This document shows, one piece after another, positions 28,919-50,100 of a stretch of 64,000 nt of DNA (position 1 is the stretch's first letter; every line of letters begins with the position of its first letter). A program made the position numbers and the translations under genes. A model generated the notes under the pieces. That model was given only the letters and a program-made list of their open reading frames with translations. It had not been told where the DNA came from and searched no databases. Origin of the DNA: Mytilus trossulus (lineage: Eukaryota); NCBI RefSeq assembly GCF_036588685.1, contig NC_086383.1, positions 61,008,001 to 61,072,000 on the forward strand. Reading direction: 5' to 3'.

Positions 28919-29101
28919 TTATAAACTAAAATGTTCCCAAATTGAAGGAATTGTCTGCAAAAAATTCATATCTTGGTCTTTCTTATGTATCCATTTGTTG
29001 GCGATCCATTTTGATCCAAAAAATACTGGGCATCCTGCATGTAATGTTGCTTTGTCACCCTGTTCCTCTTTGTCCAAATTTGTAAAAATTAAAGCTGAAC
29101 C
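28919..29101 (-). CDS. P4HA-like terminal coding exon (distal Fe-ligand His and 2-oxoglutarate-binding Lys)
   Basis: GSALIFTNLDKEEQGDKATLHAGCPVFFGSKWIANKWIHKKDQDMNFLQTIPSIWEHFSL*. Confidence 0.92.
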   Translation of the reverse strand, partial: GSALIFTNLDKEEQGDKATLHAGCPVFFGSKWIANKWIHKKDQDMNFLQTIPSIWEHFSL

Positions 29102-32100
29102 CTACAAAATTTGATTGATTGTTTTTTAATTTCAATTTAACGTACATATCGTTCAACAAATCCTTTTATCGGCAGTTACAAATACCTAGTATCAATATCT
29201 GAAACTCCTGATGTATCCGAGTCCTGATACAAGTGTGTAGTGTGTAACAATGGGTAAGTGAGATTTTTATCCGATTTCCCAACAGCAAAATAGATGGCCT
29301 TGAAGGGCAAACAAGAAGTTATCTTCTATTGCGTCTTCCATAATAATGTCGGTTCAACATTTATAATTCAAATTGAACGGATTATATGAATGCATCTGAT
29401 AACCATTCTAACGTGGTTCTTAAAAGTAGTCTGTAATGCAAATGATCGAATGTACTGCCGTTAAACATTAAAAGATTGATTGAAGGCTGTTAAATCTATT
29501 TCAAGCAATATTGGATCTATCGTAATGGTTCTTTTTTTATAGAGGACACCGGAGTGCCTCGAAAGAATCACCGGCGGGATAACGGACATTCATATTCAAA
29601 AAGAGAGGCAAACTATACCGAGAGATATTCAAACTGATAAAACAATAAAAAACGAACAAAGTCATGGCCAAGTTTCCTCAGGCTATTGATACAGTAGTTG
29701 CACTGTTAAGACAACTCGGAAATCGTGAACTTTTTTGTTTTTTTGTTTGGTTTAATCTTCTGACAATAACGTTGTATATCTTTTTAATTCATTCGCAGAA
29801 AGATAAATGATCCAATGTAACAAAGGACAATGTAATCACACCAAATTTTGATGTAGTTCATGTTGCTTGGTCGTTACTATTTTATGTTGCGTTTTGTGTA
29901 CTGTTCTTTGTCTGTTCGTCGGTTTTTTTTGTTTGTTCATGGCATTGTCAGTTTGTTTTCGACTTATGAATTAGGATATCCGTTTGGGAAAATTTTACTT
30001 CTCATTAGGAAATTAAGAAATGTAAAACTATACAATGTAGATCAAATCTGTATTACTAGTATCTCTACAATGGAACGAACGTAAACAACCTCAATCAATA
30101 GGTTAACAGCACACATTTGTAGAGTTCAATGGTCTGGCTTGAATGACAGTAGTAATTCTGATTTTTGCGATTCATAAGTGATGCACAGCTTAACCGTCAA
30201 ATATTCGTCTGTGATATCGTAGTGGTGAAACTTACATTTTTAAGTGTCTATGAAACCACAATGTTACAATTCATCAACGATACCAGCCTTATGATAAATT
30301 ATATCAAATACGAGTGAGACTTAGATGAGACTCGTCATTGCAGCTCTAATCAAAATAAATGATTGAAAAGCATAAACGCAAAAAAATCTAAAATCTTTAT
30401 AATAGATATTGCTAATACCGTCTAATTAGTTATCAAAGGTATCAGGATTATAATTTAATACGCCAGACGCGCGTTCCGTTTACATAAGACTCATCAGTGA
30501 CGCTCAGATCAAAATAGAAGTAAAGCCAAACAAGAACAAAGTTGAAGTATTAACACTGACAATAGAAAGTCCCTGGAATGTTATGTTAATACTTTCAGAA
30601 TAATATATTGTATATACATATATACCTTCACAGGTGACACGGCAAGTCCTAATTCTGGGAAAACTGTCGAACCACCGACTTCCACGTCACTCAACTGTAA
30701 TACAAGAAATGCATAATTTAGTTATTAAATTGTATTGTAATGAAATATGCGATTGGCTGATTTAATAGATACTTGAACAGAAAGAAAACACAAATTGACA
30801 GAAAACTATTATATTAACTATGCATTATTTCTAGGGATGTCAAAAGATCTGAAATTTAATACTCGGATACTCGGTCATAATACTCGAGTACTCGCAAGTA
30901 CTCGGATGAATCTTAAACGTCTATTGAAAAGTTTTTAAGTTAGATTTTAGGTGGGATGCAGTGCTTTTGTTATTACCTTTCATAAACACATTGACGAAAT
31001 ACAAACGTACTACAAACATAGCTTGCTCCTCTGTTTTTTGTGTCAATAAAACAATAAATAAACGACTGCCGTTTTTACAAATAACCTATCATAATAGCAA
31101 TTATTGTTTGTTTACGTGTTTATGAAACAAATTTCAATAAAATCAAAATATTTTATAAGCAAAAATCAAAAATATTTGCATTTTATGTCCGACAAAGTAG
31201 ACAATATATTTAGCATCTGTTCTGAGGAGTTGGTATTTTTTATAACACGACTTGTCTATTTAAAATTTGTCAACAACAATTATGATATTGGACTTCAAAT
31301 TACTTGTGCTTTTTCGTGTTGCTCAGTATTACTTTTTCTGTGGGTTTTTTTTTTTTTGCACTATCGTTTGTCTGATTTTCATTTTTTTTTTCTTTAGCCA
31401 TGACGTTGTTAGTTTATTTTCAACTTTTGTGGTTGAATGTCGCTCTCATACTTTCGCATATCTCTAAATTGTAAATTAAACAATTATAGTTAAGCTTTAA
31501 AAAGGGATTAATTAAATTAATTTAAATATACATCTCATACCAATCAGAAGTCTTGATTAACAAACAAAGGTAAGTTTTTACGGCTTGTGATGAGTTAATT
31601 ATTTATCCATGAACATGATGAAAGTGTTGATCCGTGTACAAACACCGTTAAAAATGTCTCAATCAGTTGTGTAGGGTTCCCCGCAGGTTACTTTGATTTT
31701 GTGTTCGTTTAAAAATATGATCTGGTCACGATTTCAGACGAAAGACTGTTAAACTCTCTATTTTTTTGTTACAAGGAGTGCACATGAAAATATTCCCTCG
31801 AAAGGAAAGGACGTTGCTGGTACTACTATAACAGATAGTATCCTCAGGATAAACATAGTTATGTTATTAACTTATTTTATTGAGTATTACGAAGGAGAAA
31901 TTTCAACAGAACTAAAATTGAGTGGAAATGTGAAGAGAACTATATCAAGATGTATAAAAAGCAAACGAGTATCCGAGTACTAAAACAGTACTCGAGTACT
32001 CGGTCTTCCGAGCGAGTACCCGAGTACTCGAGTACTCGTTGCCATCCCTAATTATTTCAAATGGTCAACAGAGTTTCTCTTAACATGCCACCTTCCTTGA

Positions 32101-35100
32101 GAGAAGTAGTATGGATGATCAATCAAAGTACTGAAACTAGTTATTCACATTTTTGGAAGGCATAAACGAGGGCGAAATATACCAAATGGACAGTCAAACT
32201 AATAAATCAAAAATAATCTGAAAATTTCATGGCTAAAAGAGAAAAGGACAGACAACACTAGTACACAAAATACAAGAAAGAAAAATAAACAGTAGTCAGC
32301 ACGATACCCTTCGTATACCGGGGATGATCTGAGGTGCTCCTGAGATCTTACTCCACATGTGGCACTGTCGAAATGCACATTTGTAGCAGAACACATCGGT
32401 ACCGTAATTAAATGGAAGTTTTGAGTAGATATCAAGACTGATTTATAAACAGATCAATAAATAAAAATTTAGACATATACCGAGATGATCGAATGAACGG
32501 CAATGGCGCCTCCACAAAACGTAAATTAAGTAATAAGGTGACATGTAATACTTACGTAAAGTATTATAGTCAAAACCCTGTTTGTTTTAGTTTGAAGATC
32601 ACCAGAAAGCTGCAATATAAATAATCATGCAAACAATATAGGTCCAAGTCAGGGAAATGGCCATAGTTCGTTTCTGTGTGTGTTAAATTTTAATGTTGTG
32701 TCGTAGGTCACTTATATTTCAGCGTTTCCTCACTTTTAGTTTAACCCGTATTTGTTTTTTCTCTATCGATTTATAAATTTCGAACAGCGGTATACTAATT
32801 TTGCCTTTGTTTTATATTTGCTACCCATTTACACATGTTACATACTGTTTTCAAGTTTAAAACTATAAAACTTTGCCTTTTATTGAAATATTTGTCCATT
32901 GTAATTCATTTTTAACGTTACAGATGACGCATTATCATATATTGTACACATATTATATTGTCATTTAAAACAATACGTGTTTGTTTACAAAAATGGTATT
33001 ATAATAAGTCTTTACCTTTAAGCAATATGAAGGTTTTACATGTCAAACATGGCAATGCTTTAAATGCTAAACAATACTACATTTCTACATTGGCTAGAGG
33101 TATAGGGAGAGGGTTGAGATCTCACAAACATGCTAGTCTTGTATTATTTTAATCTTAGTTTCTTGTGTACAATTTGGAAATTAGTATGGCGTTCATTATC
33201 ACTGAACTAATATATATTTGTTTAGGGGCCAGCTGATGGACGCCTCCGGGTGCGGGAATTTCTCGCTACATTTAAGACATGTTGGTGACCTTCTGCTGTT
33301 GTTTTATTCCTATGGTCGGGTTGTTGTCTTTTTGACACATTCCCCATTTCCATTCTCAATTTTATCATGATGATTTACAAGTGCTTTATGAACAAATAAT
33401 AATAAAATATTGGGAGGTCAAGATAACTCTATAAAAACAACATAAAACGATCGGTTTAATCAAGTAAGTAACCGTCCAAAGTTAGGAAAATGTTTTCAAT
33501 TGGTTTGATGTGTTTGAGTTCGATCAGGGACTTTCTGTTTTGAATTTATTTGGGAGTGTATGCCTTTTTGTGCTTCTTCGTTACATTTGTTGTTTTATAG
33601 TGATATTAAGATGATAACACAATATTGACTGCTGTACCCCTATTTTTGACATTTTTACTCTTTGAGTATGTTTGTTTTGTTCATACATCGTTGACAATGT
33701 AATGGAATTTGACGCAACTTTCATACAAGTGAGAGGTTTAGCTAGCTATAAAACCAGGTTCAATCCACCATTTTCTATATAAGAAAATGCCTGTACCAAG
33801 TCAGGAATATGACAGTTGTTATCCATTCGTTTGATGTGTTTGGACATTTGATTTTGCCTTTTGATTTTTGATTTTCCTTGTCGAATATTCCTCGGAGTTT
33901 TTACTTTTTATTCCTTTTTTTTTCTCTCCTCTTTATTTCACTACTTACCTTAACTATTTCGAAAAATTCATATCTTACCAAAGTTTCATCCAGCCAATCA
34001 AAATGTGGCTGAAATTCTCCACCGATACCGTAATTTACAATCTGAATTAAAATAAGCATTTGTATGATAATAAAGATAAGGCATATTTAACAGAAATGCA
34101 TATTTACAAAACGACAATAACAAAATGATACAAGCAATGAAACATGTCGTTTATTAAAATTGAAGGCCAGAATCACAACAACTGATGTAGAGGGAATAAA
34201 ACGGAGAGTTGATAACTCAATTTTTAAATTAGTGTGTGCCAGACAAATAGTAGGACTACATTAGATTCATCTGTGGTGTCCGAATCAAAACTTGGAACTT
34301 TACACGGGGGTCTTGCAACAGTAAGCAAAAAAAAATTGTTTAAAAAAAAAACATAAGTTTTCCCGTTCAATGCAGTTTTAAACTTACACCGAGAGAACGT
34401 TTAAATTTTAAACTAATGATTAACAATAATGTTCGTTGTCATTTCACGGCACTAACGGTGTCGCAAAAATCGTTTGGGTTGCATATCACATCTTCAAATA
34501 AGTCGCCAGTAATATCTATATAAAATTCTATTAGATCCTTCGCCCAGCTATCAACCAAGATAACGGTTACTTCAAAAATACCACCCAGGATGATAATTCA
34601 ATATACCTCAAGCATTCTTTTTCTTATTTATGCGTCCCTTGCTTTCAAAATTTCCAGATTAAAGTTTCCGATCAAGGTAAATCCAGAAAAACCAGTTCGA
34701 ATTCACATTTTATTAAGTTTGGTTTTTAATTTTTATGGAATTACGGAGGCTGCAACTATTTGTTCATTTTTTGTCTTGAAAGGTTTTATCTATCAGCAAA
34801 CATTTCTGAAATTTTGGTTTAAAGTAACAAGGGTTTCAGCTCCCGTGTAACGAACGCACAAAATGTCATGTTATAAAGAAACATTAGATCTACAAATTCT
34901 TTATCACGCGACTACTGTCCAATCATCAACAACCGTAAGATTGTCAAACTTTGATGCGTGTTTTCACTTTATAACTTGTTTTAATAAAAGTTAATGAAGT
35001 ATATACGTCATAGTATGTGTAGGTGAAGCGAGGGATATCAAAGTGATAATCAAACTCCTAAGTCGCAAAGAAAAAAAAAGGAAAACGATCAAAGACAAAA

Positions 35101-38100
35101 AAAGTATAGAATAAACTCATCATAGATACCAGTACTAAATTTAGTATATACGCCAGACGCGCTTTTCGTGTAACAAAAAAATCCATCAGTGACGATCGAA
35201 ACTAAAAAAAGTTTAAAATGCCAAATAAAGTACGAAGTTAAAGAGCATTGATGACCAAAATTCTTAAAAGTTTTGCCAAATACTGCTTAGGTAATCTTTG
35301 CCTGACTTAGACAAGCCTTAGTATTACACACAGTCTGCAAAACTGAACACTGAGCAAAATAAAACAACATTAAAAACTGAATTAATTCCAAATGATTAGG
35401 AAGGGTAAGAAGATTCTCCTCCATATCTAGAACCTGTTGTGTTGCTCATGTGAATAGAATGCTAGTGATATGGATTTTAAAGCTTTCCTCGATATTCTGT
35501 GAAATTCCATCAATATTGATCGTTTTTATAAAAATACTATTGAAAATATAAGCAGGTTTAAGCAATATGGATAAACCTGGTCTAATTTTTTCACTCAATG
35601 TTTAGTTTTGATTTTTTTGTTTTCTGGTATACGTTTTTTCATTGTTTTCGTAGTTTTTCATTGTTTGTAGCGGTTTTCTTTCGAATTATAAAATGCTCTT
35701 TAGATAAGTTCTGCCTCTTTTTCAGAGTTAATATTTGTAATGTTTGGTGTTCCAGTCTTAAATACCTCTATATATTCCGTATTTCGTAATTTATAAGGTA
35801 TATTGGGAATATATGGGAAGATTTTGGTTGTTTAAGTATCATATGAAAGCTTTGGAACTTGGAATCACTGCAGAATCCTTGTTGAAAGTTTTACTTGAAT
35901 AATAAAGAAGCATATGAAAGGAGGGCACATTTGCCCTGTTGTTCAGATCAGAAGTTCCGGTTTTTTAAACTATCACACTTCCGGGAACCAGTACTCTCTA
36001 ATATGCAATTGAAGGTATGTTGATTTTTTCCGCACAAGTCAGGATATTGTACAGTTTTGACATAAAATAACTGCCACTTTATTTTAACTTAAAACAAAGT
36101 AGCCATTAATGCTTGAAATTGCAGAATTAAGCTTAGAAAACAATAGGGGCTATGAATTAGTGGTTTTATAGTTATAAGTATTCAACCTTTTTTGTTTACC
36201 TGCAAGTGGTCCGCTTGTCGAATGTTTGTTCTGAGACCAGTTAGACGTTCTAAACGATCATTAAACTGAATCACATCTGGATCAGTCATATCTTCCATAA
36301 AATTATACCTAAAACAAGAGTCAACAGACTGGAACAGTTAGGGGTTAAAAAAATTATCAAAGGTACCAGGATTATTATTTTGTACGCCAGACTCGACATA
36401 GGTCTCATCAGCGACGCTCAGATCAAAAAAGTTATGAAGCCAAAAAGTACAAAGTTGAAGAACTTTGAGGACCCAAAATTACAAAAATATTGTTCATAAT
36501 ATATCATCTGTGAGTTTATTATCATTTCTGGCTGGCATATCAAATATCATTAATTTAGTGCATAAATTCCAAAATTTAATGTCCATAGAAGTTGGTTTAA
36601 TTTCTGATCTTATTGTGCAATAAGATATAAGAAACCACTTTTTCATTTACCCTATTATTGCTCACCCGTTATAGTGAGGTCATTACTTAGAGTAGTAAAA
36701 ATAAAACTGTACAAGAATAAGAAGATTGTCTCTTTTTTCAATTTGTCAAGTTTCTAATATACATTTGAATCAACTATTAACACTAAAATGGAGGACTTAC
36801 GTCGAGCTAGTTCTTGTACTGGAATCAAGAGGTCTCAAAAGTGAATCATCACCATGATAGATTTTTGATCTTTGTAACTGGAAATATAAAATCAATCATT
36901 AACACTAAAATTGAAGACTTACGTCGAGATAGTTCTTACACTGGAATCAACATGCCTCAATGGTGAATCATCACTTACAACTTTTGATCTTTGTAACTGG
37001 AAATATAGATAATGTGTTTAAATAGACAATTTTTAATAGTCCTTTGTGTATACTATTTGATTACATATTTACTGACCTCTTTTTCGGGTCAATTTGAACT
37101 TCGGTGTGGATGGGTTTTTGGTTTGTATCTTCTTTTTTTAAGGGTTGGTGGTAATATGCGTAACTTATCACATAAAACGTAGAGCTCTTCATCATTTTAT
37201 TTGTTAAAACAGATTGTATTAGTTCTCTTCAAATAAATGCATCGGTGGGTTTTTTTCATTCGGGTAACATAGTAATTTATTTATAAACTTATTAGAACAA
37301 AATGAAGGTGTAATAAGGTTTATCGACACATTGTGGACATTCCGTGGGTACCAATTGCTTCCCTTTAAATAGCAGACTTCATATATTGTTAGAAATGACA
37401 CTTTATGTTGAAACATATTACTTTTATTTCCATGCAATCGATACATTTAAGAGCATGCACCGTAAGAAAAAAGTAATCAAGCCAGAATAAGAATAGATTA
37501 AAACTGAAACCATTTATAGAAATATAATCACAAACCACATTTTCAAAATGTTGTCCAATACTAAAACGGTGGGAAAATGTATATTTCTTTTTTTAATTCT
37601 TTCAAAATGTCAATATTGGTATTTTTAATATTTTCCAATAAAACAATAGATTTACGGATACTTCAGAAAAATCGTTATATTAAGGTGTCAAACTTAAGCC
37701 ATAAGGAATTCAAAATAGGTTTTTCACACAATATTTCAAAGTGTATAATTATATGTTTCAAATGCTTTCTTTTCAAATAGATTAGAGGTATAGGGGGATG
37801 GTTGAGATCTCACAAAAATGTTAAACCCCGCCGCATTTTTGCGCCTGTCCCAAGTCAGGAGCCTCTGGCCTTTGTTAGTCTTGTACTATTTTAATTTTAG
37901 TTTCTTGTGTACAATTTGGAAATTAGTATGGCGTTCATTATCACTGAACTAGTATATATTTGTTTAGGGGCCAGCTGAAGGACACCTCCGGGTGCGGGAA
38001 TTTCTCGCTACATTGAAGACCTGTTGGTGACCTTCTGCTGTTGGGTTTTTTTTTTTTATTTGGTCGGGTTGTTGTTTCTTTGACACATTCCACATTTCCA

Positions 38101-41100
38101 TTCTCAATTTTATGTTCTATTAGAAAAGTGTATCCGTGCAGTGCATCTTGTTCTATCCGTAAGTTCCAGTTTGGAAATTGTGAACAGACATAATTTAGTG
38201 ATTTTGTTCCCCTTGAAATTACCAATTCAAAGAGGTTTTGGTAAAAAGAGGAAAAAAACATGACCTTTTCCATAACAGTTCTTTACCTGGTTTGCAAATC
38301 CTTTCAATTTTTCGAGAAGATTCTGACTAATGATGTCATGGACGACAAGTATCATTGGAGATTTATTAATGTACTCAACTTTGATTGGTTGCTTGAAAAA
38401 AGTTAAGTCTTGAAATCCTAGGTATTTACAAACTCCACCAAAGCGAGTATTCTAAAATAATTGACAAATAAATCTTGAAACATTGCTTGTTTAAATAAAA
38501 ACTTATCGGATTTTGTCTAATAATTAATTCGTTTCTGTGTATGTTACATTTTAATGTTGTGTTTCGGTTGTGTCGTTGTTCTCCTCTTATATTTGATACG
38601 TTTCCGTCAGTTTTAGTTTGTAACCCTGATTTTTTTCCTATCGATTTATGAGTTTCGGACAGCGGTATACTACTGTTGCCTTATTCGATTTAAAAACATT
38701 AATTTGTATCTTTAAAGTTGGGATAACAATAAAAACAAATAACGATCTTAAATGACACAAAATAAAATTAGGCATTTAATACATTAATGTCTATCAAAAG
38801 CCAATTCTGAAACAAAAAATCAGTGTATATATGTATTGTTTAACATTCATTTAAAAAACAACGCCAAAAGATTACGTTTGTTATGTATATACAATAGTTT
38901 TAAATTCTTCCTTTTAAAATTGTTACACGATGATGACTGTTGTGTCCGTATTTTGACTATTTTATTTATTTTGTCTGTTTAGTTAACGCATCATTGTAAA
39001 TATAACAGAATTTGATGAGACTGCCATCAAAGTGAGAGGGTTAGTGATATAAAACCAGGTTTAATCCACCATTTTCTACATTTGAAAATGCCTGTACCAA
39101 GTCAGGAATATGACAGTTCTTGTCCATTCTTTTTTTATGTGTTTTACTATTTGATTTTCCCATGTGATTATGGAATTTCCGAATTGATTTTCCTCTAAGT
39201 TCAGTATTTTTGCGATTTTACTTTTTAATGATAAATCGGGAGAATCATTCATTTGTGCTGGGTTTTTCAGCTTATGCATGTTTGTGCAAAAAGAAAGATT
39301 TTTTATCATCCTGTTTCGAGGCCTGCATAAGGTTTTTTTTCAAAGCTACGTTTAGTTTTTAACATACCCTTGTCAGACATGTATTTTCATATCTCTTCGT
39401 GAAGTTTGCATTTCTACTAAATTCTATCCCATAATACATCATGGAATTGTTTTTAACCATTGACTGAAATTCTGCAACTTCTGTTGTGTCTAAATCTAAA
39501 ACGACACGGATCCGTTACTTCCTGTTTATTTATTTTTTATTCTGAGGTGGGTGATAGGATATGTCAAAATGTAAAGAAAACGGAATAACACTAACATTTT
39601 TTTCATTCCAACTTTTTTTTCATCACGGCAATTGATGTAAAAAATTGAAAGCAACACGTTTATTAATTTCCTGCGTCCGAAACGCTTTTCTTGGATTTAC
39701 CTTCACCAAGAACACTCAAAGCCAAACATTTAAAATCCGAAGATATATAAGTACCGAAACCGTTGAAGAGCTATCTGTCAAAAATACAAAAAATAAATGG
39801 CCAAATTTATCTAGAGCCAACTTAGCCTGAAAAAGTTGAAACCTTAGTTTCTTAATTTCAAAATTTATAAACGGACTATTTTAGTAAAGTTTGTTATATC
39901 ATGTCAGTACCGAAGAACTGACTAGTGAGCTGATGATACCCTCGGGGACTGATAGTCCACCAGCAGAAGTATCGTAATTTCGATGATGGTAGATGCAATT
40001 TGGATGTAACAATTTTTTTCATTGGCTAAAAGTTGCCGTCAAATACACAGTTGACCAAGCGTAACTAAGATAGGACCCGCCATTTGTAATTGATTGAATC
40101 AACAAATGTTCGAATACTACTATTTAATCAAAAATAAAACAACACCTACTTCGAATTTGCCGTTCTAATGTAATTTTATCCGAACTTGAAGCGTACATGT
40201 AACGACTTAACCTCCAGTTTGTAAGTTTACATTTGTACATGTATGACGTCACGTTTAGCAATGACGTCTTTGTGCAAAAATCATTCGTGAAGTTTCGCGA
40301 ATTTTTTTCTATTTGTCAAATTTAGACATTTTTTCAAAGTTTTATCGTATTTTATCTTTTGTAATGCATTAGAATCGTAAAAGAAGTACTGTAGTTGAAG
40401 AGTTGCCACCGTCAATTTTGATTTGACGGTCGCAAATCTCCGTTTTACTGTCTCCGCTGTGCATCGCCAGTAAAAAAACGTTGAAGAGATGATACTACCA
40501 AAATGGACCTTTTGTCCGACCATCTCAATTGCAGTTAAAAACTATTTTCTTTAGAGACGGGCCTCATTAGTCGTGTTTTAATGTCGTTTTTTTTTCTTTC
40601 TATTTGTGACATTTGTACCTCTTGTGTCTGTTTGTTTTGTTCGAACATCATTTTTTAATATAATAAAATTTGAAAATTCTGTCATACAAGTGAGGTTTGG
40701 CTAGCTACAAAATCAGGTTCAATCCGTCATTTTCTACATGATTAAATGCATGTACGAGTCAGGAAAATGACAGTTGTTATCCATTCGTGTTTGAGCATTT
40801 GATTTTGTAATTTGGTTAGGGACTTTCCATTTTGAATTTTCCTCGTAGTTTAGGATTTTTGGGATTTTACTTTTTTCTTTAACTAATTCTATAGACTGTC
40901 AACACTCAGGTTGAATATTCAAATACGGGATGTTGTTTAACTGTAATATTTATTGACTCATCATATCTACAGTAGAGGCGTGTTCATTTGAAAAATTACG
41001 TATACCATCTTTTACTCATATTCATAAACACTTTACATAAACATAACATGCCAGCATTTTCGATATTTTTTTTACTTACTAAAATTTTCCAGTCTATTAG

Positions 41101-44100
41101 TTAATAGTTGCATCCTTGTTCGTATTCTGTCTAATCGATCCTATAAATAAAGCATTGTCTGATGTACAATATTTGTCGTTTTTTTTTGTGTAATTTATAC
41201 GTCTTTTTCGTTTCTCGTTTTTAATATAGATAAGACCGTTGGTTTTCCCGTTTGAATGGTTTTACACTAGTAATTTATGGGCACTTTATAGCTTGTTGTT
41301 CGGTTTGAGCCAAGGCTTCGTGTTGAAGGCCGTACATTGACCTATAATGGTTTACTTTTATAAATTGTTATTTGGATGGAGATTTGACTCATTTGCACTC
41401 ATACCACCTCTTCCTATATTTAATATTGTCTCCATTTAAGCACCTATGATCACCCCAGCTTTAGTTTTCTATGTTTTGTCTTGTGTCCTATTATTTGTCT
41501 GTTTTTTTATTGATTTTTTAGCAATGATGTTGTCAGTTTATTTTCTATCTATGAGTTTGGCTCTCTCTCTGGTATCTTTCGTCTCTCTTTTAAAAAAAAA
41601 AATTATAACATTTTTTTATTTTTCATCTCGTATTTTGTCAATGTTTCTGATGAAGGTCGCATGATATTTTTTCTGCTTCTTCCATTGTAGAGTTGAACAT
41701 CAACTATTAATAGCTAAGTCTTATTGAATTATTGAATTCATTAAATATATGGTTGTGTTTGCTTTTATTGTTATTAATTGTTCCCGTTGTTTCGTTGTTT
41801 TCCCCTTAAAGTTGATGTGTTTTTCTCGGTCTTGATATGTTATATGGATTTTGTTTTACAGTTAAACAACATCCGGGATTCAAATATTCAACCTATGTGC
41901 TGACAGGCTATAGAATAAGTACAAGAAGAAAATAAAATCACAAAATATACTAAACTCCGAGGAATATTCAAAACGCATAGTCCCTAATCAAATGACAAAA
42001 TCAAATAATGCACCACATCAAACGAATTGACAACAACTGTCATATTCCTGACTTAGTACAGACATTTCCAAATTTAGAAAATGGTGGATTGAACCTGGTT
42101 TTATAATTGATTAATGGCTATTGTACAGCGGTGTACTACTGTAGCTTTTTTTTTAACGTAATACTGAATCACCTGATATCCAATTCGGAAAATTGTGAAA
42201 AGATTTTTATTCTTTTTTTTCTCCATTGATAGCAGCAATACTTTGATAGTGCTCTCTCTCTTACTTGTTATGTTAACCTAAAAGCAATTTCAGTGACGAT
42301 ACATACGTTTTTAATTTGCATTAATTCCGAATACATTCAATGCAGCAGTTTTGATGTTAGAAATAAACTCATCATAGATACCAGAACTGAATTTAGTATA
42401 TACGCCAGACGCGCGTTTCGTCTGCAAGAGATTCATCAGTGACGCTCGAATCCCAAAAAGTTAAAAAGGCCAAATAAAGTACGAAGTTGAAGAGCAATGA
42501 GGTCCAAAATTACTAAAGGTTTTTAAAGATAGCAGCAATACTTTGATAGTGCTCTCTCTCTTACTTGTTATGTTAACCTAAAAGCAATTTCAGTGACGAT
42601 ACATACGTTTTTAATTTGCATTAATTCCGAATACATTCAATGCAGCAGTTTTGATGTTAGAAATAAACTCATCATAGATACCAGGACTGAATTTAGTATA
42701 TACGCCAGACGCGCGTTTCGTCTGCAAGAGATTCATCAGTGACGCTCGAATCCCAAAAAGTTAAAAAGGACAAATAAAGTACGAAGTTGAAGAGCAATGA
42801 GGTCCAAAATTACTAAAGGTTTTTAAAGAAAATGGTACATTCACACTGTCCAGGACCTAGCATTTAAATTATTCCTTCGAAAGGGACCTAAATATCATCT
42901 ACTGTCAATTATTAATCGGAATGAGTGTCATTGGACCATTCACGATTCACTCCCAATTCAGAGTATAAAATGGAGAAAGTGAGAAAGAGCCTACAAATAA
43001 TTCTTAGATTCTTGTATTTCATTGTTTAAACGAATTTGAAAAAAAAGATATTCATACTTTTTCAGAACATTTTACTCCAAAAATAGAAGCCTTATTTCTC
43101 GTATTAATCATGAACTTTTGAAAGAACTTGGCAGGAATATGTTCCCCGGCTTATAAGGTTGCCACAAATATTATTATTGCCGGACCTTATCAAAATAGGA
43201 AAGAGAACAAAAATATGATCGATTGAGAAAAAATAATCGTTCATGATATCGGGTGTATTGAGATTCGTTTGTTTTCGTGGATACCAATTGGTCGTTTCAG
43301 AAGCGTACACCAAAGCGGTTTGATTGGTTTAAAACTTCATAAACAATGGAAATTCAACCAATGATGTATCGTTATTTTCACTTTGGGGTACGAACAAGGA
43401 AATTACCCATGATGCTTTAGATTTTGAAACGGGCAATTATCGTGCATCAAGAAATCATTGTATACACTTGATTTCAATGATTTCTTAATGCACGATAATT
43501 GCCCGTTTCAAAATCTAAAGCATCATGGGTAATTTCATTGTTGTTTTTCCTGAGTTTGCTAACGAGCCAATAGAAAATGTGTTCTTTCTTAAACAAATGA
43601 ATTCGTGGTTCACTTTAACCCACGAAATTAACGAAAATCAGTTAAATGAAGAACGTTACTCCTCTAAACATAGTCTGATGATTCATTACACAATGAACAT
43701 TGACAACATAAATAAGAAAACTTACTTGTCTTTTAATTTCTGTTATGAATTCATTTACATCTGCTAAGAATTCCTTTGCTTTACCGGAATTCAAATGTTT
43801 GATCTTATCTACTGATGTCTGCATCCATTGTAAAGCTATTCTTGTGTATCCTGTCTCGTAGACAAACTTACCGATGTCATAACAATCGTATGCTGAAGAA
43901 TAAAAGCAAATAATGTTAAAGGGCGTGTTTTTCAACAGACTGTCGGCATTCCAAGGGGAACAAACTGTGCACCTCTACTTGCCGACTTGTTTCTTTATTA
44001 TTATGAGGCTGATTTCATGCAGGAACTTCTTAGAAAGAAATATAAGAAGTAAGCAATATCCTTTAACTCTACTTTCCGCTATATAGACGATGTTCTTTCA

Positions 44101-47100
44101 CTAAACAATTCAAAATTTGGTGACTATGTAGAACGCATCTATCCCATCGAACTAGAGATAAAGGATACTACATAATATACAGTTAATTCGGCTTCATATC
44201 TTGACTTACATTTAGAAATAGACAATGAGGGTCTGTTGAAAACAAAATTTTACGACAAAAGAGATCATTTCAGCTTTCCCATTCTGAACTTTCCATTTCT
44301 AAGTAGCAACATTCTAGCAGCACCTGCATACGGGGTATATATCTCCCATACGATATACCCGCGCTTGCATTTCCTATCATGATTTTCTTGATAGAGGGTT
44401 GCTGCTTACAAGGTAGCTCTTAAACCAAGAGTTCCAAATGGTGAAGTTGAAATCATCCCTTCGTATATATTACAGATGCCATCACGAGTTGGTTGACCGT
44501 TATGGTATTACCGTTTCACAAATGATATCGGATATGTTCCTCACGTCGTAACTACAATCCCCTTCATTTTCATGAATGTGACCTACCGAATTAGACTATT
44601 TACCGGATTTGTCATCACATAAGCAAAACACGACTGGTGCCACATGTGGAGCAGATCTGCTTACCCTTCCGGAGCACCTGAGATCACCCCTAGTTTTTGG
44701 TGGGGTTCGTGTTGTTTATTCTTTAGTTTTCTATGTTGTGTCAAATGTACTATTGTTTTTTCTGTTTGTCTTTTTCATTTTTAGCCAAGGCGTTGTCAGT
44801 TAGTTTTAGATTTATGAGTTTGACTGTCCCTTTGGTATCTTTCGTTCCTCTTTTAAAGAAATATTCCTTATTTTCGTCGATTTGATATGTAACTAATTGA
44901 AGTGATTACCAAGATAAACTTCCTTTGTGATTCTTCTCATTTTTCAACAACTATCTAAATAAGGTATATTCTCTCCTCAAATGTGAGTCAAGTGTTTTAT
45001 TGTAAGTATGCATTATGAAGAATGTAAAAGATTGATAATGAAATGTTCATTCTTATTTGTGTATTTCTGGTTAAGAAATTTAAACTTTCTATAGTAGTTA
45101 TTGATCTTCTTATTTTATCCATTGGCAAGCAATTGTTTAAGTCATTTTGTTTAAGTCAAAATGCCTGTACCAGGTTAGGAATATGACAGTTGTTATCCAT
45201 TAGTTTGATGTGTTTGGGCTTTTGATTTTGCCTTTTGATTTTGTATTTTCCTTTTTGACGTGTCTTTTGCGGTCAGTTCATTGCTGTACAGATATTTCAC
45301 TTTTCTCAGTGTATGCTTAGACTATTCAGATTCCTTTTTATTCTGTTCAAAACAACATCATACTATACATTGATATAATCATAATTATAAATTAAATGTT
45401 AACAAATGGGAAAAAATAAGGCTTTTTTACCTCAGGAATAGATTGCCTTAGCGGTATTTGACAAAACTTTTAGGAATTTTTGGTCCTCAATGCTCCTAAA
45501 CTTCATACTCTAGTTGGCCTATTAATCATTTTTTTATTCGAGCGTCGCTGATGAGTCTTTTTTTAGACAAAACGCGCATCTGGCGGAATTATTAAATTTT
45601 AATCATGGTACCTATGATGAGTTTATTTGTCTCAAAATCTACTGCACAGTGATGAATCGACTTTAAGCGAATTGTCTAAACAGTTTCCAATTTACTGTAA
45701 GCGAATTGTCTAAACAGTTTCCAATTTACTGCAAGCGAATTGTCTAAACAGTTTCCAATTTACTGTAAGCGAATTGTCTAAACAGTTTCCAATTTACCGC
45801 AATTGATAAGTTTGAATATCGACTAAAAGACTAAACTCGACTGAATTGTTGATTTTAAGACTTTTCAGAAGATGATCTAACAAAATGACCATTTAAGACT
45901 AGTTATTATTAACTATTGAAATGTCAATTATACATTTCCCTTTCAGTCTTGTATAATGGGTTTGAATACCTACCACTTAAAACTGGAACTTGTATTCCTA
46001 GTACATTTCCGCTTGCCATCTCTGGAGGTGTAACATTATATGTGTTCTGAAGCCTGGTGAACGATGTAAGAACGCCTTTCAGATCAACTTCTCCTGGTAA
46101 CTTGTACTTAAATGTTGCTTGAAACTCTGAAATTATGGAATAAAAAGTATATGTTGTATGATCAAGGACATTCGGTCCCCGATAGTATCACCAATAAGAA
46201 TTCAGTACATTCAGAGGACTAATAGATAAGATAAGATAAGATAAATACGTTTATTGCAATAAGCACAATTATGCTATAGCACATTTAAATAACAACATTA
46301 TCATGTGTAAGCAACATGAATTTATGTTAATGCATATGTATAAGAAAATGCAGAGAACAGTCATAATTAACAATATGAACATTTTGTTGATAAAAAAGAC
46401 AATTAGATACATAAACTACGTTAATATGAAAGTTCTGAGTTTCCAACTTTCACGCAAAAAACACATCAAATTGTAAATAACAGTTTTTGTTTGAACTTGT
46501 AGTAGTGAATACAGTTTGTTGATATTTGGCCGTGTATGATAATAGTTTGAGAAGTATTTAAGTCTATACTGTCTATATGCTGGACAAACCATAATAAAAT
46601 GATATTCATTCTCTATACATTGCATAGTACAACATTTACAAATTCTATCCTCCCTTCGTTGTTTTATGTAACGACCAGTTTCAATATTTAGTTTTAATAA
46701 ACCAAATCTTAATAAAGACAACATTTTAACATTGATATTTTTCGATATATATTGTTCCATCTTAAAATCTGTTTTTATCATTTTGTACAATATTAGTTTT
46801 TCAGAGCTCTCTACAGACTCACGCCAGCTCTGATAAAATTGATCTAACAAACGTTCATTCAAATATATCAAATTTTACATTAATATTCTCTTGTGTATAC
46901 CATAAATAATTAAATCCAAGTTGAAAAAGTAAATTACGAACATTTGTGGCCCAATTTTCTTTACCATTATAACAGTCAGCAACCAGAACTTGATATATTT
47001 CATATACAATATCTGGTTTCTTGTTTATAATATTAACCCAGTATTTCAACAACTTTTGTTTCCTAGTAACATACATAGGTAAATGACCAAGATCGCCAAT

Positions 47101-50100
47101 AGTACAACAGACAGGCGTGTTTTGGGGTACTTTTAAAACAAATCAACAAAATCTATTATGTACAGTTTCGATTTCTTTTGCATGATGAAAACCCAATACT
47201 TCAGAGGCGTAGTTTAAAATAGACGAAACTAGACTGTCAAACATAGCACATTGCTGTTCTGGTGAAATATAAGTAGATCTTAATGAATTCAACAATGCTG
47301 CAAGCGCTCTACTGCCCTGTCCCGCTAGGCGTTTTTGGGTTTGTTGAAATTTGCCGTTGTAATGTAGAAGAACTCCAAGGTATACATAGTGATCGACTAC
47401 TTTTAGTTCCGTATTGTCATCATGCCATGAATGGTTTACTCTTTGCCATCCTTTACGAAAAACTACAACTTCTGTTTTATCCTTATTAACCCCAATTTTC
47501 CATTTTGTACAGTAGATGAATAATTTATCTAAAAGAAACTGAAGAGCTTCTGGTGTTTTTCCAAATAGCACAGTATCATCAGCGAATAACAACAAGTATA
47601 TCAAATATCCAGTTAGGCTTATGTAATCACTAGTTCTATTATCATTCATACGTAGATCATCAGCAATGTCATTAATAAAAAATATGAAAAGCAGAGGAGA
47701 CAAGGGTTCGCCTTGTTTTACACCAATATTATTGGAAAAAACATCTGAAAGTAATCCATCACATTTAACGCGAATGTTCACAGTTGCATATACTGACTGC
47801 ACCATGGAAACAAACTTGCTACTTATTCCACTATTAAAAAGCTTATACCAAAGTATGCGACGCTCAACATTGTCAAAAGCCTTACAAAAGTCCACGAATG
47901 CTGAATACAGTTTTTCTTTTTGCGACAAGGTTGTTGATATTATTCCATGAAGAATAAAAACAGCGTCAACAGTTGATTTTTTGCGGCGAAATCCAAACTG
48001 GTTTGCTAAAAGAATCTCATTATCTTCGGCCCAACAAAGTAAACGATTATTCAAAATTGAACTAAAAATCTTTGAAAATACACTGATCAATATAATTGGC
48101 CTATAGTTATTAGGGTTTAAAAGATACCCTTTCTTTGGTACAGGTATAACAATTCCTTCTATCCAATTATCGGGGTAAATACTAAATTCAAATAGTTAAT
48201 TAAACAAAACTGTTAAAAATGTTGAAAAAAGCTGAGAATCTGATAAAAATATTTCTCCACTGATTTCATCTGTTCCTGTACTTTTACCACGCTTTAACTT
48301 TTTAATTGCAGATTCAATTTCCGATTCAGTAAATTCCTTATCTAAATCGTCTATGTGTAGATCTTCCGAACGAATTTTGTCTATTAATGTTTTAACTTCT
48401 TCTGATAAATCACCAGGTTCCGCACCAAGAAAGTTTTTAAAATGTTCAAAAATGTCTTTTGCATCGGCCGCGCATCTAGATCGACCCTTAGGTCTAACTT
48501 TTGACCAGAATTCTCTGGGATTCACTTTAGCCAATCGCCTTAGCTCCTGTCCACGTGCGCGTTTGTATCGAGTTTTCGCTTTTCGTTTAACTTTGTTGTA
48601 TTCGTTTCTTGCTGTCACGTATAATTGTCTATTGGGACTGTTTGGGTAGCGCTGAAAACGGTTCCGTGCTTGGTGAAATTCACTTCTAAACAGTTTACAT
48701 GAGTGATCGAACCAATCATTTTCACTAAGTTTATGTTTACTCAAATGTTTTTTAACAGATGTTTTACCAAAAACATTAAGCGCACATTTAAATATAACAT
48801 CGGTAATCACATTTACGGCGTTGTTCGCACTTTCATTGTCATTTATGTTGTTTACTAGTTCCAACATATCAGTTTGTTTCTCCAGTAATGCTTGCGTGAA
48901 ATCGTTAACTTTCTCATTATCCCACTTTATATATGTATAATGGTTTGAAGAATGTTCCTCATTATACGTTCGATTTGTCTGAATTTCATAAAATAAAGGC
49001 GAATGGTCAGAAAATTCATTATGTTCCAGAACTTAAAAAATTCTCAACCAATTTATAATCACATGGACAAGTTAACCGATAATCATTCACACTTCTTCCG
49101 TTTGAAGTACAACAAGTAAATTGTCCAGCCAGATCGTTTCGTAATCTACCATTACATATAGTTAAACCCGTGTTATGACACATTTGGACAAGCTTTCGAC
49201 CAAACTTATTTACTGTTGTATCCTTAGAACATCTTGGCGGTGTAATGGGATTTTCATCATGCACTACACTACTCACATATCTATCTGAATGAGCAAAACC
49301 TAGCCAATCATCTAGTAACCCAACTCTACAAATAAAATCACCACAAACAAGTAGGCTTCCCTTTTCTCTATACTCAAAAACAATATTTTCTATTAATTCA
49401 AAAAAGTCACAGTCATTTACATTATAATATGAGTACTTCTCATGGGGTATGTACACAAAACATATGTAAATATCAGTATCATTATGAAAAAAAAATCCTT
49501 TTTTAACTTGATCAATAAAATACCATTTTCAATTTCCTTGACTATTTCAATACCTTTCATAATATATGGTTTACAGTAAAAACATATTCCACCCTCGTTT
49601 CTGACCCCTATATTATTACATATACCAAATGACGATAGATTTTCAAAATTATTTAAGTGTGGCTTATAACTGCCCTTTAACCATGATTCACAAAGAAATA
49701 ATAAATCATAATCATTAATAAAATTAAGAAAGTCATTGTCATCGATACAAGAAATAATACCATGAATGTTCCAACTTAAACACTTGATGTTTCGAGAATG
49801 CTCTCTGCGTGTATCCTATGGACCAACATATTCTTTACCTGCTACGAACAGTTTGTCTCTCACGAAATATGCCTTTGTATTGTTTGCTTTAAGTGCTCTA
49901 AGTTTCGGCAGTAGATTTTTTCTTCTTTTCAGAATTTCAACTGGCAATTGTTCGGATATACCAAAATTAGTGTCTTTAAGATTAACAGCGCTTTTACGGA
50001 CTTCTTGTTTCTGAAAATAGTTTGAAACTTCACCAATAACGGGCGGATTCTGTCCCCCTCTTTTCCAATTCTGGAAGCACTTTTTATGTTTATTTCCCTC

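What the first reader, a model, noticed from the sequence alone, without database searches (positions are those of the whole stretch)
36770..37010. Recent tandem exon duplication creates apparently mutually exclusive P4H-alpha exons at the same position as in human P4HA1
Seen: two copies of exon 8 (74 and 77 nt), both open, both phase 0 to 2, both with ttccag/gtaagt sites. They are separated by only 45 nt (36878-36922), and their intronic flanks are still alignable (gtaagtc.tc.attttagtgttaat), so the duplication is young. Including both shifts the frame, and 45 nt is probably too short for the two to be spliced together. Known: human P4HA1 has mutually exclusive exons 9/10 encoding the homologous L-x-RATV...YR-x-SK segment at the start of the catalytic domain. 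Inference: mutually exclusive splicing evolved independently at the same exon in a mollusc, giving two variants (VVSDDSPLRHV..VRTIS vs IYHGDDSLLRPL..TRTSS). The only indel between the copies is exactly 3 nt, which suggests selection on both.
Basis: partly seen in the sequence, partly recalled or inferred. Interest (0 to 1): 0.8.

Follow-up and report, generated by a model that had tools for sequence, protein, structure and literature searches.

The report
Duplicated prolyl-hydroxylase exon, one copy used
A bay-mussel collagen prolyl 4-hydroxylase gene has two tandem copies of the small exon that encodes its substrate-binding loop, but the RNA and annotation evidence available here shows only the downstream copy in use, so the proposed either/or splicing remains unproven.

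Summary
On the minus strand, a roughly 119-nt unit holding one coding exon and both its splice sites is duplicated head to tail. This gives exon 8a (36996..36923, 74 nt) and exon 8b (36877..36801, 77 nt), 45 nt apart.

The gene is Mytilus trossulus LOC134690524, a collagen prolyl 4-hydroxylase alpha subunit, and this is coding exon 8 of 13. The exon encodes the substrate-binding "hairpin loop". A structural paper says human P4HA1 splice variants alter that same element.

Frame and the 45-nt spacing allow only one copy per mRNA. Use of both copies is not shown:
- Both RefSeq isoforms carry 8b.
- The one RNA assembly that covers the gene joins 8b to exon 9 and has no cover on 8a.
- 8a carries Ile at a Ser kept in all 14 other P4H sequences compared.
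- The 3-nt indel is an insertion in the expressed copy, so it says nothing about 8a.

Verdict: a real duplicated exon with a silent or rarely used twin. Regulated mutually exclusive splicing remains possible, at about 0.3. The scan noted other tandem exon pairs and splice-junction duplications in this genome, but on other genes.

The parts
28919..52405 (-). Coding span of Mytilus trossulus LOC134690524, a collagen prolyl 4-hydroxylase alpha subunit with 13 coding exons.
   Evidence: RefSeq protein P0009 (XP_063406558.1, 521 aa) maps by exact peptide matches in 13 segments; 520 of 521 residues are placed and residue 242 spans a junction. Contig length 71253669 equals that of the window's contig C11.
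38287..38451 (-). Coding exon 7 (165 nt, 55 aa), ending in phase 0. It is skipped in RefSeq isoform X2.
   Evidence: P0012 lacks these 55 residues. Contig record 7 of run X2 covers 38287-38452.
36890..37007 (-). Upstream tandem unit (118 nt): 11 nt of acceptor, exon 8a, and 33 nt of donor flank.
   Evidence: Direct repeats D1 and D2; alignments.
36923..36996 (-). Exon 8a (74 nt, 24 codons plus 2 nt, phase 0 to 2). It is open with intact AG/GT sites, is unannotated, and has no RNA support here.
   Evidence: Depth is zero in bin 36940-37096 in runs X21, X24 and X2; X3's mean word depth of 1.55 there does not fit exon 8a. It is absent from both RefSeq isoforms.
36928..36930 (-). Codon ATC (Ile) in 8a. 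It sits where 8b has AGC (Ser), at the Ser of the R-x-S motif.
   Evidence: sequences. The Ser is invariant in 11 of 11 Mytilus P4H-alpha proteins (alignment A2). It is also present in human alpha(II), Bacillus anthracis P4H and Chlamydomonas P4H.
36973..36978 (-). Internal GTAAGT at positions 19-24 of exon 8a, a consensus donor core that is absent from 8b.
   Evidence: Using it with the 8b acceptor would keep the frame. No RNA evidence exists for this.
36878..36922 (-). 45-nt spacer. It is the donor flank of 8a fused to the acceptor flank of 8b.
36898..36904 (-). TGTTAAT, the only exact YNYURAY branch-site match in the spacer. Its branch A lies 24 nt from the 8a donor and 21 nt before the end of the spacer (the 8b acceptor AG).
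   Evidence: No exact YNYURAY is found in the 100 nt upstream of 8a.
36768..36888 (-). Downstream tandem unit (121 nt).
36801..36877 (-). Exon 8b (77 nt, 25 codons plus 2 nt). This is the copy present in the mRNA.
   Evidence: P0009 residues 338-362 and P0012 residues 283-307. Contig record 1 of run X2 joins it directly to exon 9.
36200..36308 (-). Coding exon 9.
   Evidence: Record 1 of run X2 covers 36200-36305 with 1 mismatch.
63898..63971 (+). Single exon-8 homologue of the neighbouring plus-strand paralogue (XP_063406561.1).
   Evidence: Only one candidate was found in the window plus 8 kb beyond it.

Best explanation
A segment of about 119 nt was duplicated in tandem. It held coding exon 8 of the Mytilus trossulus collagen prolyl 4-hydroxylase alpha gene LOC134690524, with 11 nt of its acceptor and about 33 nt of its donor flank. 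The exon encodes the hairpin loop, one of two loops that close over the peptide substrate, together with the following R-x-S strand.

The two copies lie only 45 nt apart, and each is 3n+2 nt long. A productive mRNA can therefore hold exactly one of them (shown). In the evidence available, the downstream copy 8b is the one spliced in. It has gained one codon and several loop substitutions (shown).

The upstream copy 8a keeps the ancestral length, an open frame and consensus splice sites. It is nevertheless skipped, and it carries Ile at a deeply conserved Ser (shown). I read 8a as a silent or at most rarely used twin, not the second arm of a regulated switch (inferred).

A likely reason for the bias is as follows (inferred). 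The duplication placed a perfect branch-site motif, TGTTAAT, 21 nt upstream of the 8b acceptor and only 24 nt from the 8a donor. Spliceosome assembly on 8b would then block definition of 8a.
For: Duplication and geometry.

Gene identity and exon map.

Only 8b is annotated. P0009 (X1) and P0012 (X2) both contain the 8b peptide, and each is the single member of its 90% cluster. No 8a isoform is on record.

RNA evidence:
- In run X2, contig record 1 (438 nt, depth 9.2) runs from exon 9 (36200-36305, 1 mismatch) straight into 8b (36798-36877, 0 mismatches).
- Depth is 0 in the bin holding most of 8a (36940-37096).
- Record 7 (depth 4.8) covers exon 7 with a 30-nt (k-1) overhang.
- The surplus depth in the 8b bin (about 280 depth x nt) equals two 30-nt overlaps of summed depth about 9.3. 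That is what the exon 7-to-8b and exon 6-to-8b junctions of isoforms X1 and X2 would give (my arithmetic).

State of 8a: it has Ile where 11 of 11 Mytilus P4H-alpha proteins and the human alpha(II), B. anthracis and Chlamydomonas enzymes have Ser.

The indel is an insertion in 8b. All six orthologue proteins from four other Mytilus species have 24 residues, like 8a.

No sign of constraint on the pair: dN/dS is 0.89-0.96, and exon and intron-flank divergence do not differ (Fisher p = 0.41).

Branch-site motif.

Context (unchecked notes): the same genome is reported to be rich in tandem copies of splice junctions that are not used. This very gene has a 32-nt x 28.6 array of exon-2 acceptor copies in intron 1.
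Against: 8a has the same 11-nt acceptor, the same first 15 exon bases and the same GTAAGTC donor as 8b. On sequence alone it should be recognised.

8a is slightly closer to the orthologues than 8b: 18-19 of 24 identical against 17. It has no stop or frameshift.

The RNA evidence is thin. One assembled run of unknown tissue covers the gene, and contigs drop rare variants. The two raw-read runs laid (X21, X24) had essentially no reads on any exon of this gene and say nothing either way, and X3 showed no clear exon cover.

Annotation pipelines miss tissue-specific isoforms. A paper reports that some unannotated duplicated exons are expressed in a tissue-specific way (PMC9013439, passages).

The functional importance of the Ser is inferred from conservation. 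Its contact with substrate in the algal enzyme is recalled, not checked.
Confidence: 0.55

Rival explanations
1. The pair is a true, regulated mutually exclusive exon pair. 8a and 8b are both spliced in, in different tissues, stages or conditions. This gives two enzymes with different substrate-binding hairpin loops, as in human P4HA1.
For: The pair meets all structural criteria for such exons: adjacent, homologous, same phase, similar length, intact sites. Exactly one copy is needed for the frame. Any donor-to-branch-point distance inside a 45-nt intron is below the 50 bp used as the steric-interference criterion (PMC5740500, passage). The human P4HA1 variants change the same loop (PMC9676403, passages). 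The loop is hypervariable among Mytilus paralogues, so variation there is tolerated. Unchecked notes say other genuine pairs exist in this genome.
Against: There is no 8a isoform among the proteins on record for this gene. 8a has zero depth in the one run that expresses the gene. 8a has Ile at the conserved Ser. dN/dS is about 1. According to unchecked notes, RefSeq does list both versions for other pairs in this genome, so their absence here carries some weight.
Confidence: 0.3
2. The second copy is not a fixed feature of the species. It is an assembly error, or a duplication carried by only one haplotype of the sequenced animal.
For: No read set laid here covers 8a or the 8a/8b junction, so 8a rests on the assembly alone. 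Bivalve genomes are highly heterozygous (general knowledge).
Against: The copies differ at 11-13 exon positions plus an indel and at 4 flank positions, with a clean unit junction. That does not look like a collapsed or stuttered read. The contig is chromosome-scale (71.25 Mb). The neighbouring exons and 8b match independent RNA contigs almost perfectly.
Confidence: 0.04
3. 8a contributes in another way. Its internal GTAAGT (exon positions 19-24) could be used as a donor. That would make an 18-nt micro-exon spliced to 8b, which is in frame and adds six residues. Alternatively, the motif could act as a U1-binding decoy that tunes use of 8b.
For: The motif is present in 8a and absent from 8b. The combination of exon 7, the first 18 nt of 8a, 8b and exon 9 stays open, and the resulting 101-nt intron would be long enough to splice.
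Against: There is no RNA or annotation support. The exonic side of this site (GTT) is poor. This is pure sequence inference.
Confidence: 0.05

Closest known systems
[quoted passage not shown]
   Same: It is the same enzyme family and the same structural element. The mussel exon aligns to the alpha(II) hairpin loop RATVRDPKTGVLTV plus the YRVSK strand. PMC9676403 (passages) states that the C-P4H-I splice variants affect the hairpin loop. PMC12525012 (passage) calls the P4HA1 transcripts mutually exclusive.
   Different: In human both forms are expressed in tissues (paper statement). The event is treated as ancient, with equivalent exons reported in Caenorhabditis (PMC8373072, passage). Here the copies are still 82-85% identical with alignable introns, and only one is seen in RNA. 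Whether the exon boundaries coincide exactly was not tested. The human exon length of 71 bp is recalled, and Fig. S1 of the paper is a supplement that I could not open.
Unannotated tandemly duplicated exons (candidate mutually exclusive exons found by similarity to a neighbouring exon)
   Same: It is an intronic twin of an annotated exon, open and with splice sites. This class is said to affect about 10% of animal genes, with over 2,000 unannotated candidates (PMC9013439, passages citing the 2002 survey).
   Different: It is very young and very tightly packed (45 nt apart). It lies in a lineage, Mytilus, where this gene's orthologues show one exon-8 peptide each.
Steric-interference exon pairs such as alpha-tropomyosin exons 2/3 (recalled), and the short-intron pairs of C. 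elegans
   Same: The donor of the first copy lies closer to the branch site of the second than a spliceosome can use. The criterion is <50 bp in PMC5740500. Five C. elegans clusters have intervening introns too short to excise (PMC4165533, abstract and conclusion passages).
   Different: In those cases both exons are demonstrably used. The tropomyosin example is recalled and was not read here.
Splice-junction tandem duplications ('junction echoes' or 'mirage' minisatellites) noted elsewhere in this genome
   Same: They are small tandem duplications centred on exon-intron boundaries whose copies are reportedly not spliced (unchecked notes). The same gene has such an array at exon 2.
   Different: Here the unit contains a whole exon with both sites and an open frame, so the copy could function.

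Membership tests
Tandem exon duplication | Two adjacent homologous exons in one gene, with homology extending into both intronic flanks. | tested here: met
   Direct repeats of 85 nt (86%) and 26 nt (100%) form abutting units of 118 and 121 nt.
Mutually exclusive exon pair | Similar length, same phase, conserved splice sites and sequence homology. | tested here: met
   Lengths are 74 and 77 nt, both phase 0 to 2. Both have the tatatttccag acceptor and the gtaagtc donor.
Mutually exclusive exon pair | Joint inclusion or joint skipping is prevented or non-productive. | tested here: met
   With both copies the first stop is at codon 94, and with neither it is at codon 57. The spacer is 45 nt, below the 50-bp criterion.
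Mutually exclusive exon pair | Transcripts with each exon are observed. | tested here: not met
   Only 8b appears in RefSeq X1 and X2 and in the contigs of run X2. 8a has depth 0 there. The data are thin: one informative run. Runs X21 and X24 did not express the gene, and X3 showed no clear exon cover.
Mutually exclusive exon pair | Both copies are under purifying selection or conserved in related species. | tested here: inconclusive
   dN/dS between the copies is 0.89-0.96, from 3.5 synonymous and 10.5-11.5 non-synonymous differences. 8a has Ile at a Ser conserved in 14 of 14 other sequences. The genomes of other Mytilus species could not be read.
Collagen prolyl 4-hydroxylase alpha subunit | N-terminal P4Ha_N region plus a C-terminal 2OG-Fe(II) oxygenase domain. 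| tested here: met
   PF08336 and PF13640 are precomputed for P0009. The PDB search matches the human P4HA1 N-terminal region (E 1.2e-9) and the P4HA2 catalytic domain (E 2e-40).
Collagen prolyl 4-hydroxylase alpha subunit | His-x-Asp...His iron ligands and the 2-oxoglutarate-binding Lys. | tested here: met
   In the alignment to 7ZSC, the mussel PHFD and LHAGCPVFFGSKW segments pair with the human PHFD and RHAACPVLVGCKW segments. The residues His430, Asp432, His501 and Lys511 are named in PMC9676403 (passage).
Homologue of the human P4HA1 exon 9/10 position | The exon encodes the hairpin loop of the catalytic domain. | tested here: met
   Residues 340-354 of P0009 align to alpha(II) Arg363-Val376. 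The loop is defined, and the statement on the C-P4H-I variants is.
Homologue of the human P4HA1 exon 9/10 position | Identical intron positions and phases in the human gene. | not tested
   The human gene structure was not examined. The 71-bp exon length is recalled only.

The most novel reading that the evidence does not exclude
A mutually exclusive exon pair caught at birth. A mussel lineage has re-invented, by a fresh 119-nt duplication, the same hairpin-loop exon switch that human P4HA1 uses. Mutual exclusion was installed instantly by the 45-nt spacing and the 3n+2 length. Under this reading, 8a is used in a tissue or stage not sampled here, and the two loops give enzymes with different preferences for collagen-like or byssal proline-rich substrates.
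Probability: 0.27. Interest if true: 0.55.

Novelty: new member of a known kind. Interest (0 to 1): 0.3.

Why it matters
If both copies were used, this would be a dated, very young example of how mutually exclusive splicing starts. It would also be a second, independent hit on the substrate-binding loop of collagen prolyl 4-hydroxylase, in an animal that makes large amounts of hydroxyproline-rich byssal proteins.

As the evidence stands, it shows the more common outcome. A duplicated exon sits unused beside the working copy, the working copy itself has changed (one extra residue and several loop substitutions), and the old-looking copy is bypassed. That is useful as a caution: an open frame, intact sites and a 3-nt indel do not show use. 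It is also one more case of the small splice-junction duplications that seem frequent in this genome.

Tried and rejected
- Tandem Repeats Finder on 36000-38500 found nothing. The repeat finder and MAFFT did find the pair.
- Searching the PDB with exon 9 alone gave only a chance hit. The RefSeq protein P0009 was used instead.
- Exon 7 against 1.84 billion representatives gave 7 hits, none carrying 8a.
- Searches with regions of P0001 and P0009 gave 7 of 24 and 3 of 4 candidates, none with 8a.
- A 138-residue piece of P0009, chosen to reach short transcript-derived fragments, gave 0 of 9 candidates.
- The raw RNA runs X21 and X24 had essentially no reads on exons 7-9 (bins at 0 to 0.13). X3 had no clear exon cover. 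Their reads fell on intronic repeats, so they are uninformative.
- Tests for faster divergence of the exon against its flanks were not significant (p = 0.41, 0.17, 0.26). I therefore dropped the idea of diversifying selection on the loop.
- Polarising the changes with orthologues gives no parsimony-informative site. The age of the duplication relative to the split from M. edulis and M. galloprovincialis stays open.
- The two other paralogues in the C11 cluster were scanned for a second exon 8. Each has one.
- Papers: PMC287275 is not held. PMC3228551 says nothing on steric hindrance. No held paper mentions Ser95 or Arg93 of the algal enzyme, and PMC9676403 does not name alpha(II) Ser382. The substrate contact of that Ser is therefore recalled only.
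- Supplements were closed. Fig. S1 of PMC9676403 and the tables of PMC8373072 may show the exact human exon limits and the invertebrate equivalents.
That joined step was left out.
Full report
**What is there.** Read on the minus strand, 37007..36768 is two abutting copies of one unit.
- Each copy has 11 nt of acceptor (tatatttccag), a short exon, and about 33 nt beginning gtaagtc.
- The upstream exon, 8a (36996..36923), is 74 nt and reads LQRSKVVSDDSPLRHVDSSVRTIS.
- The downstream exon, 8b (36877..36801), is 77 nt and reads LQRSKIYHGDDSLLRPLDSSTRTSS.
- The spacer is 45 nt.
- The repeat finder reports an 85-nt block at 86% identity and a 26-nt block at 100%.
- The exons differ at 11 of 74 aligned bases plus a 3-nt indel. 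The intronic flanks differ at 4 of 44.
- The unit occurs nowhere else in the 1.30-Gb assembly.

**Which gene.** Exon 7 (55 aa), searched against 1.84 billion representative proteins, gave 7 hits. Follow-up searches and cluster look-ups name the organism and gene.
- The window lies on a 71,253,669-base contig of Mytilus trossulus.
- The gene is LOC134690524, "prolyl 4-hydroxylase subunit alpha-2-like".
- It has two isoforms: X1 (XP_063406558.1, P0009, 521 aa) and X2 (XP_063406559.1, P0012, 466 aa).
- P0009 maps onto the window by exact peptide matches in 13 coding segments from 52405 to 28922. The duplicated exon is number 8.
- P0009 carries PF08336 and PF13640.
- It aligns to the human P4HA2 catalytic domain (7ZSC, E 2e-40) with the iron and 2-oxoglutarate residues in place.

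**What the exon encodes.** In the alignment to 7ZSC, mussel residues 340-354 lie opposite RATVRDPKTGVLTV, and the end of the exon lies opposite YRVSK.

I read passages of PMC9676403, not the whole text. They say the following.
- The alpha(II) hairpin loop is Arg363-Val376.
- It is one of two loops that enclose the peptide substrate in the algal enzyme, and it is disordered in the human structure.

Identity of the exon borders was not tested.

A passage of PMC12525012 calls the P4HA1 transcripts mutually exclusive. A passage of PMC8373072 lists P4HA1 among events with equivalent exons in Caenorhabditis.

**Only one copy can be used at a time.** Exon 7 with 8a, or with 8b, followed by exons 9 and 10, stays open. 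With both copies the first stop is at codon 94, and with neither it is at codon 57 (joined only inside a script for this frame check).

Any branch point for 8b must lie within the 45-nt spacer. The one exact YNYURAY there, TGTTAAT, has its branch A 24 nt from the 8a donor and 21 nt before the end of the spacer, which is the 8b acceptor AG. A human survey used under 50 bp between donor and branch point as its criterion for steric interference (PMC5740500, passage).

**Is each copy used?** This is where the reading weakens.
- *Annotation.* Both RefSeq isoforms contain the 8b peptide. X2 differs by skipping exon 7. Each isoform is the only member of its 90%-identity cluster, so no 8a isoform is on record. 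Three further protein searches found none.
- *RNA runs.* Of the four runs laid, the two raw-read runs (X21, X24) gave depth 0 to 0.13 on exons 7, 8a, 8b and 9. Their reads fell on intronic repeats. They do not express the gene and are uninformative, as is X3.
- *Run X2, assembled contigs.* This run does cover the gene.
  - Record 1 (438 nt, depth 9.2) goes from exon 9 directly into 8b, with 1 and 0 mismatches. The 3-nt offset of the joint is the shared GTA.
  - Record 1 stops at the first base of 8b.
  - Record 7 (depth 4.8) covers exon 7 with a 30-nt overhang.
  - Depth over most of 8a is 0.
  - The break at the first base of 8b, the halved depth upstream, and the surplus depth of about 280 in the 8b bin all fit two upstream paths into 8b. 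These would be the exon 7 and exon 6 junctions of isoforms X1 and X2. This bookkeeping is my inference.

So 8b-to-9 splicing is shown, and 8a use is not seen. The evidence is one run of unknown tissue, and contigs drop rare variants.

**What the copies say about selection.** Orthologues from M. galloprovincialis, M. edulis (two records), M. californianus (two records) and M. coruscus each show one exon-8 peptide of 24 residues.
- 8a has that length, so the 3-nt indel is an insertion in 8b, the expressed copy. It cannot speak for selection on 8a.
- 8a matches the M. edulis and M. galloprovincialis peptides at 18-19 of 24 positions, 8b matches them at 17, and the two copies match each other at 16.
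- dN/dS between the copies is 0.89-0.96 on very few differences.
- Exon and flank divergence do not differ significantly.
- A 74-nt exon stays open after 4-13 random substitutions in 55-81% of trials.
- 8a has Ile in R-T-I-S where all 11 aligned Mytilus P4H-alpha proteins have Ser. Human alpha(II) (YRVSK), B. anthracis P4H (IRTSSG) and Chlamydomonas P4H (IRTSTG) also have Ser.
- That this Ser touches the substrate in the algal structure is my recollection. I found no held paper to confirm it.

**Context.**
- The other two P4H-alpha genes of the local cluster on contig C11 each have a single exon 8.
- Unchecked notes of this scan describe many unused tandem copies of splice junctions elsewhere in this genome.
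- The notes also describe several genuine exon pairs for which RefSeq lists both versions.

Both kinds of note are leads, not evidence. They suggest that small junction-centred duplications are a common mutation here, and that the annotation does record both versions when RNA supports them.

**Verdict.** This is a real, fairly young tandem duplication of the hairpin-loop exon of a mussel collagen prolyl 4-hydroxylase.
- Geometry enforces one copy per mRNA. The downstream, more derived copy is the one seen in transcripts.
- The upstream, ancestral-length copy is intact in frame and sites. It is unsupported by RNA and altered at a conserved Ser.
- I put about 0.55 on a silent or rarely used twin, about 0.3 on true regulated mutually exclusive use, and small weights on an assembly or haplotype artefact and on use of the internal donor in 8a.
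- The kind of feature is well known (passages of PMC9013439). This is a new example, not a new mechanism.

**What I could not do.**
The age of the duplication and the presence of a second copy in sister species are therefore open.

Noticed in passing
window 51282-52182: Intron 1 of the same gene holds a 32-nt x 28.6-copy tandem array (72% matches). The reverse complement of its unit contains tgctttcag plus the first bases of exon 2, so the array repeats the exon-2 acceptor junction (exon 2 starts at 51287).
   Followed up: partly
window 38287-38451 and P0012: RefSeq isoform X2 skips exon 7 (55 aa), which removes part of the N-terminal extension of the catalytic domain. The contig break and the depth halving in run X2 fit both forms being expressed at similar levels.
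   Followed up: partly
window 36973-36978: Exon 8a contains a perfect GTAAGT donor core that 8b lacks. Using it with the 8b acceptor would add six residues in frame.
   Followed up: partly
window 46400-50465, minus strand: Long open stretches of up to 350 aa with a reverse-transcriptase-like look lie inside intron 2, on the gene's own strand. They probably belong to a LINE-type retrotransposon. No family search was run.
   Followed up: no
window 37780-38115, 36350-36480, 35110-35300, 33800-33850: Intronic repeats are covered at depths of tens to several hundred (up to about 950 when both read directions are summed) in the RNA runs, mostly by reads 90-99% alike. They are transcribed, dispersed repeat families. 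Copies of one family lie at about 37944-38120 and 33225-33374.
   Followed up: no
window 42228-42829 and 45660-45797: There is a 300-nt x 2.0 tandem repeat (99% matches) in intron 4 (the subject of another note of this scan) and a 34-nt x 4.1 repeat in intron 3.
   Followed up: no
window 52405 (minus-strand gene start) and about 55883 (plus-strand gene start); G000:C11:60964436-60964597: Three P4H-alpha genes cluster on contig C11. This gene and the plus-strand paralogue XP_063406561.1 are head to head, about 3.5 kb apart. A third gene (XP_063406262.1) lies about 82 kb away, on the lower-coordinate side of the contig.
   Followed up: partly
P0001 and P0011 (M. edulis CAG records); window 28969-29088: Two older M. 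edulis protein records end in ...HAGCPVFLD(Q/R)NG..., where the other proteins have ...HAGCPVFFGSKWIANKW.... The odd tail equals another reading frame of the last exon, which is visible in the window. The cause is probably a one-base error in that assembly or gene model.
   Followed up: no
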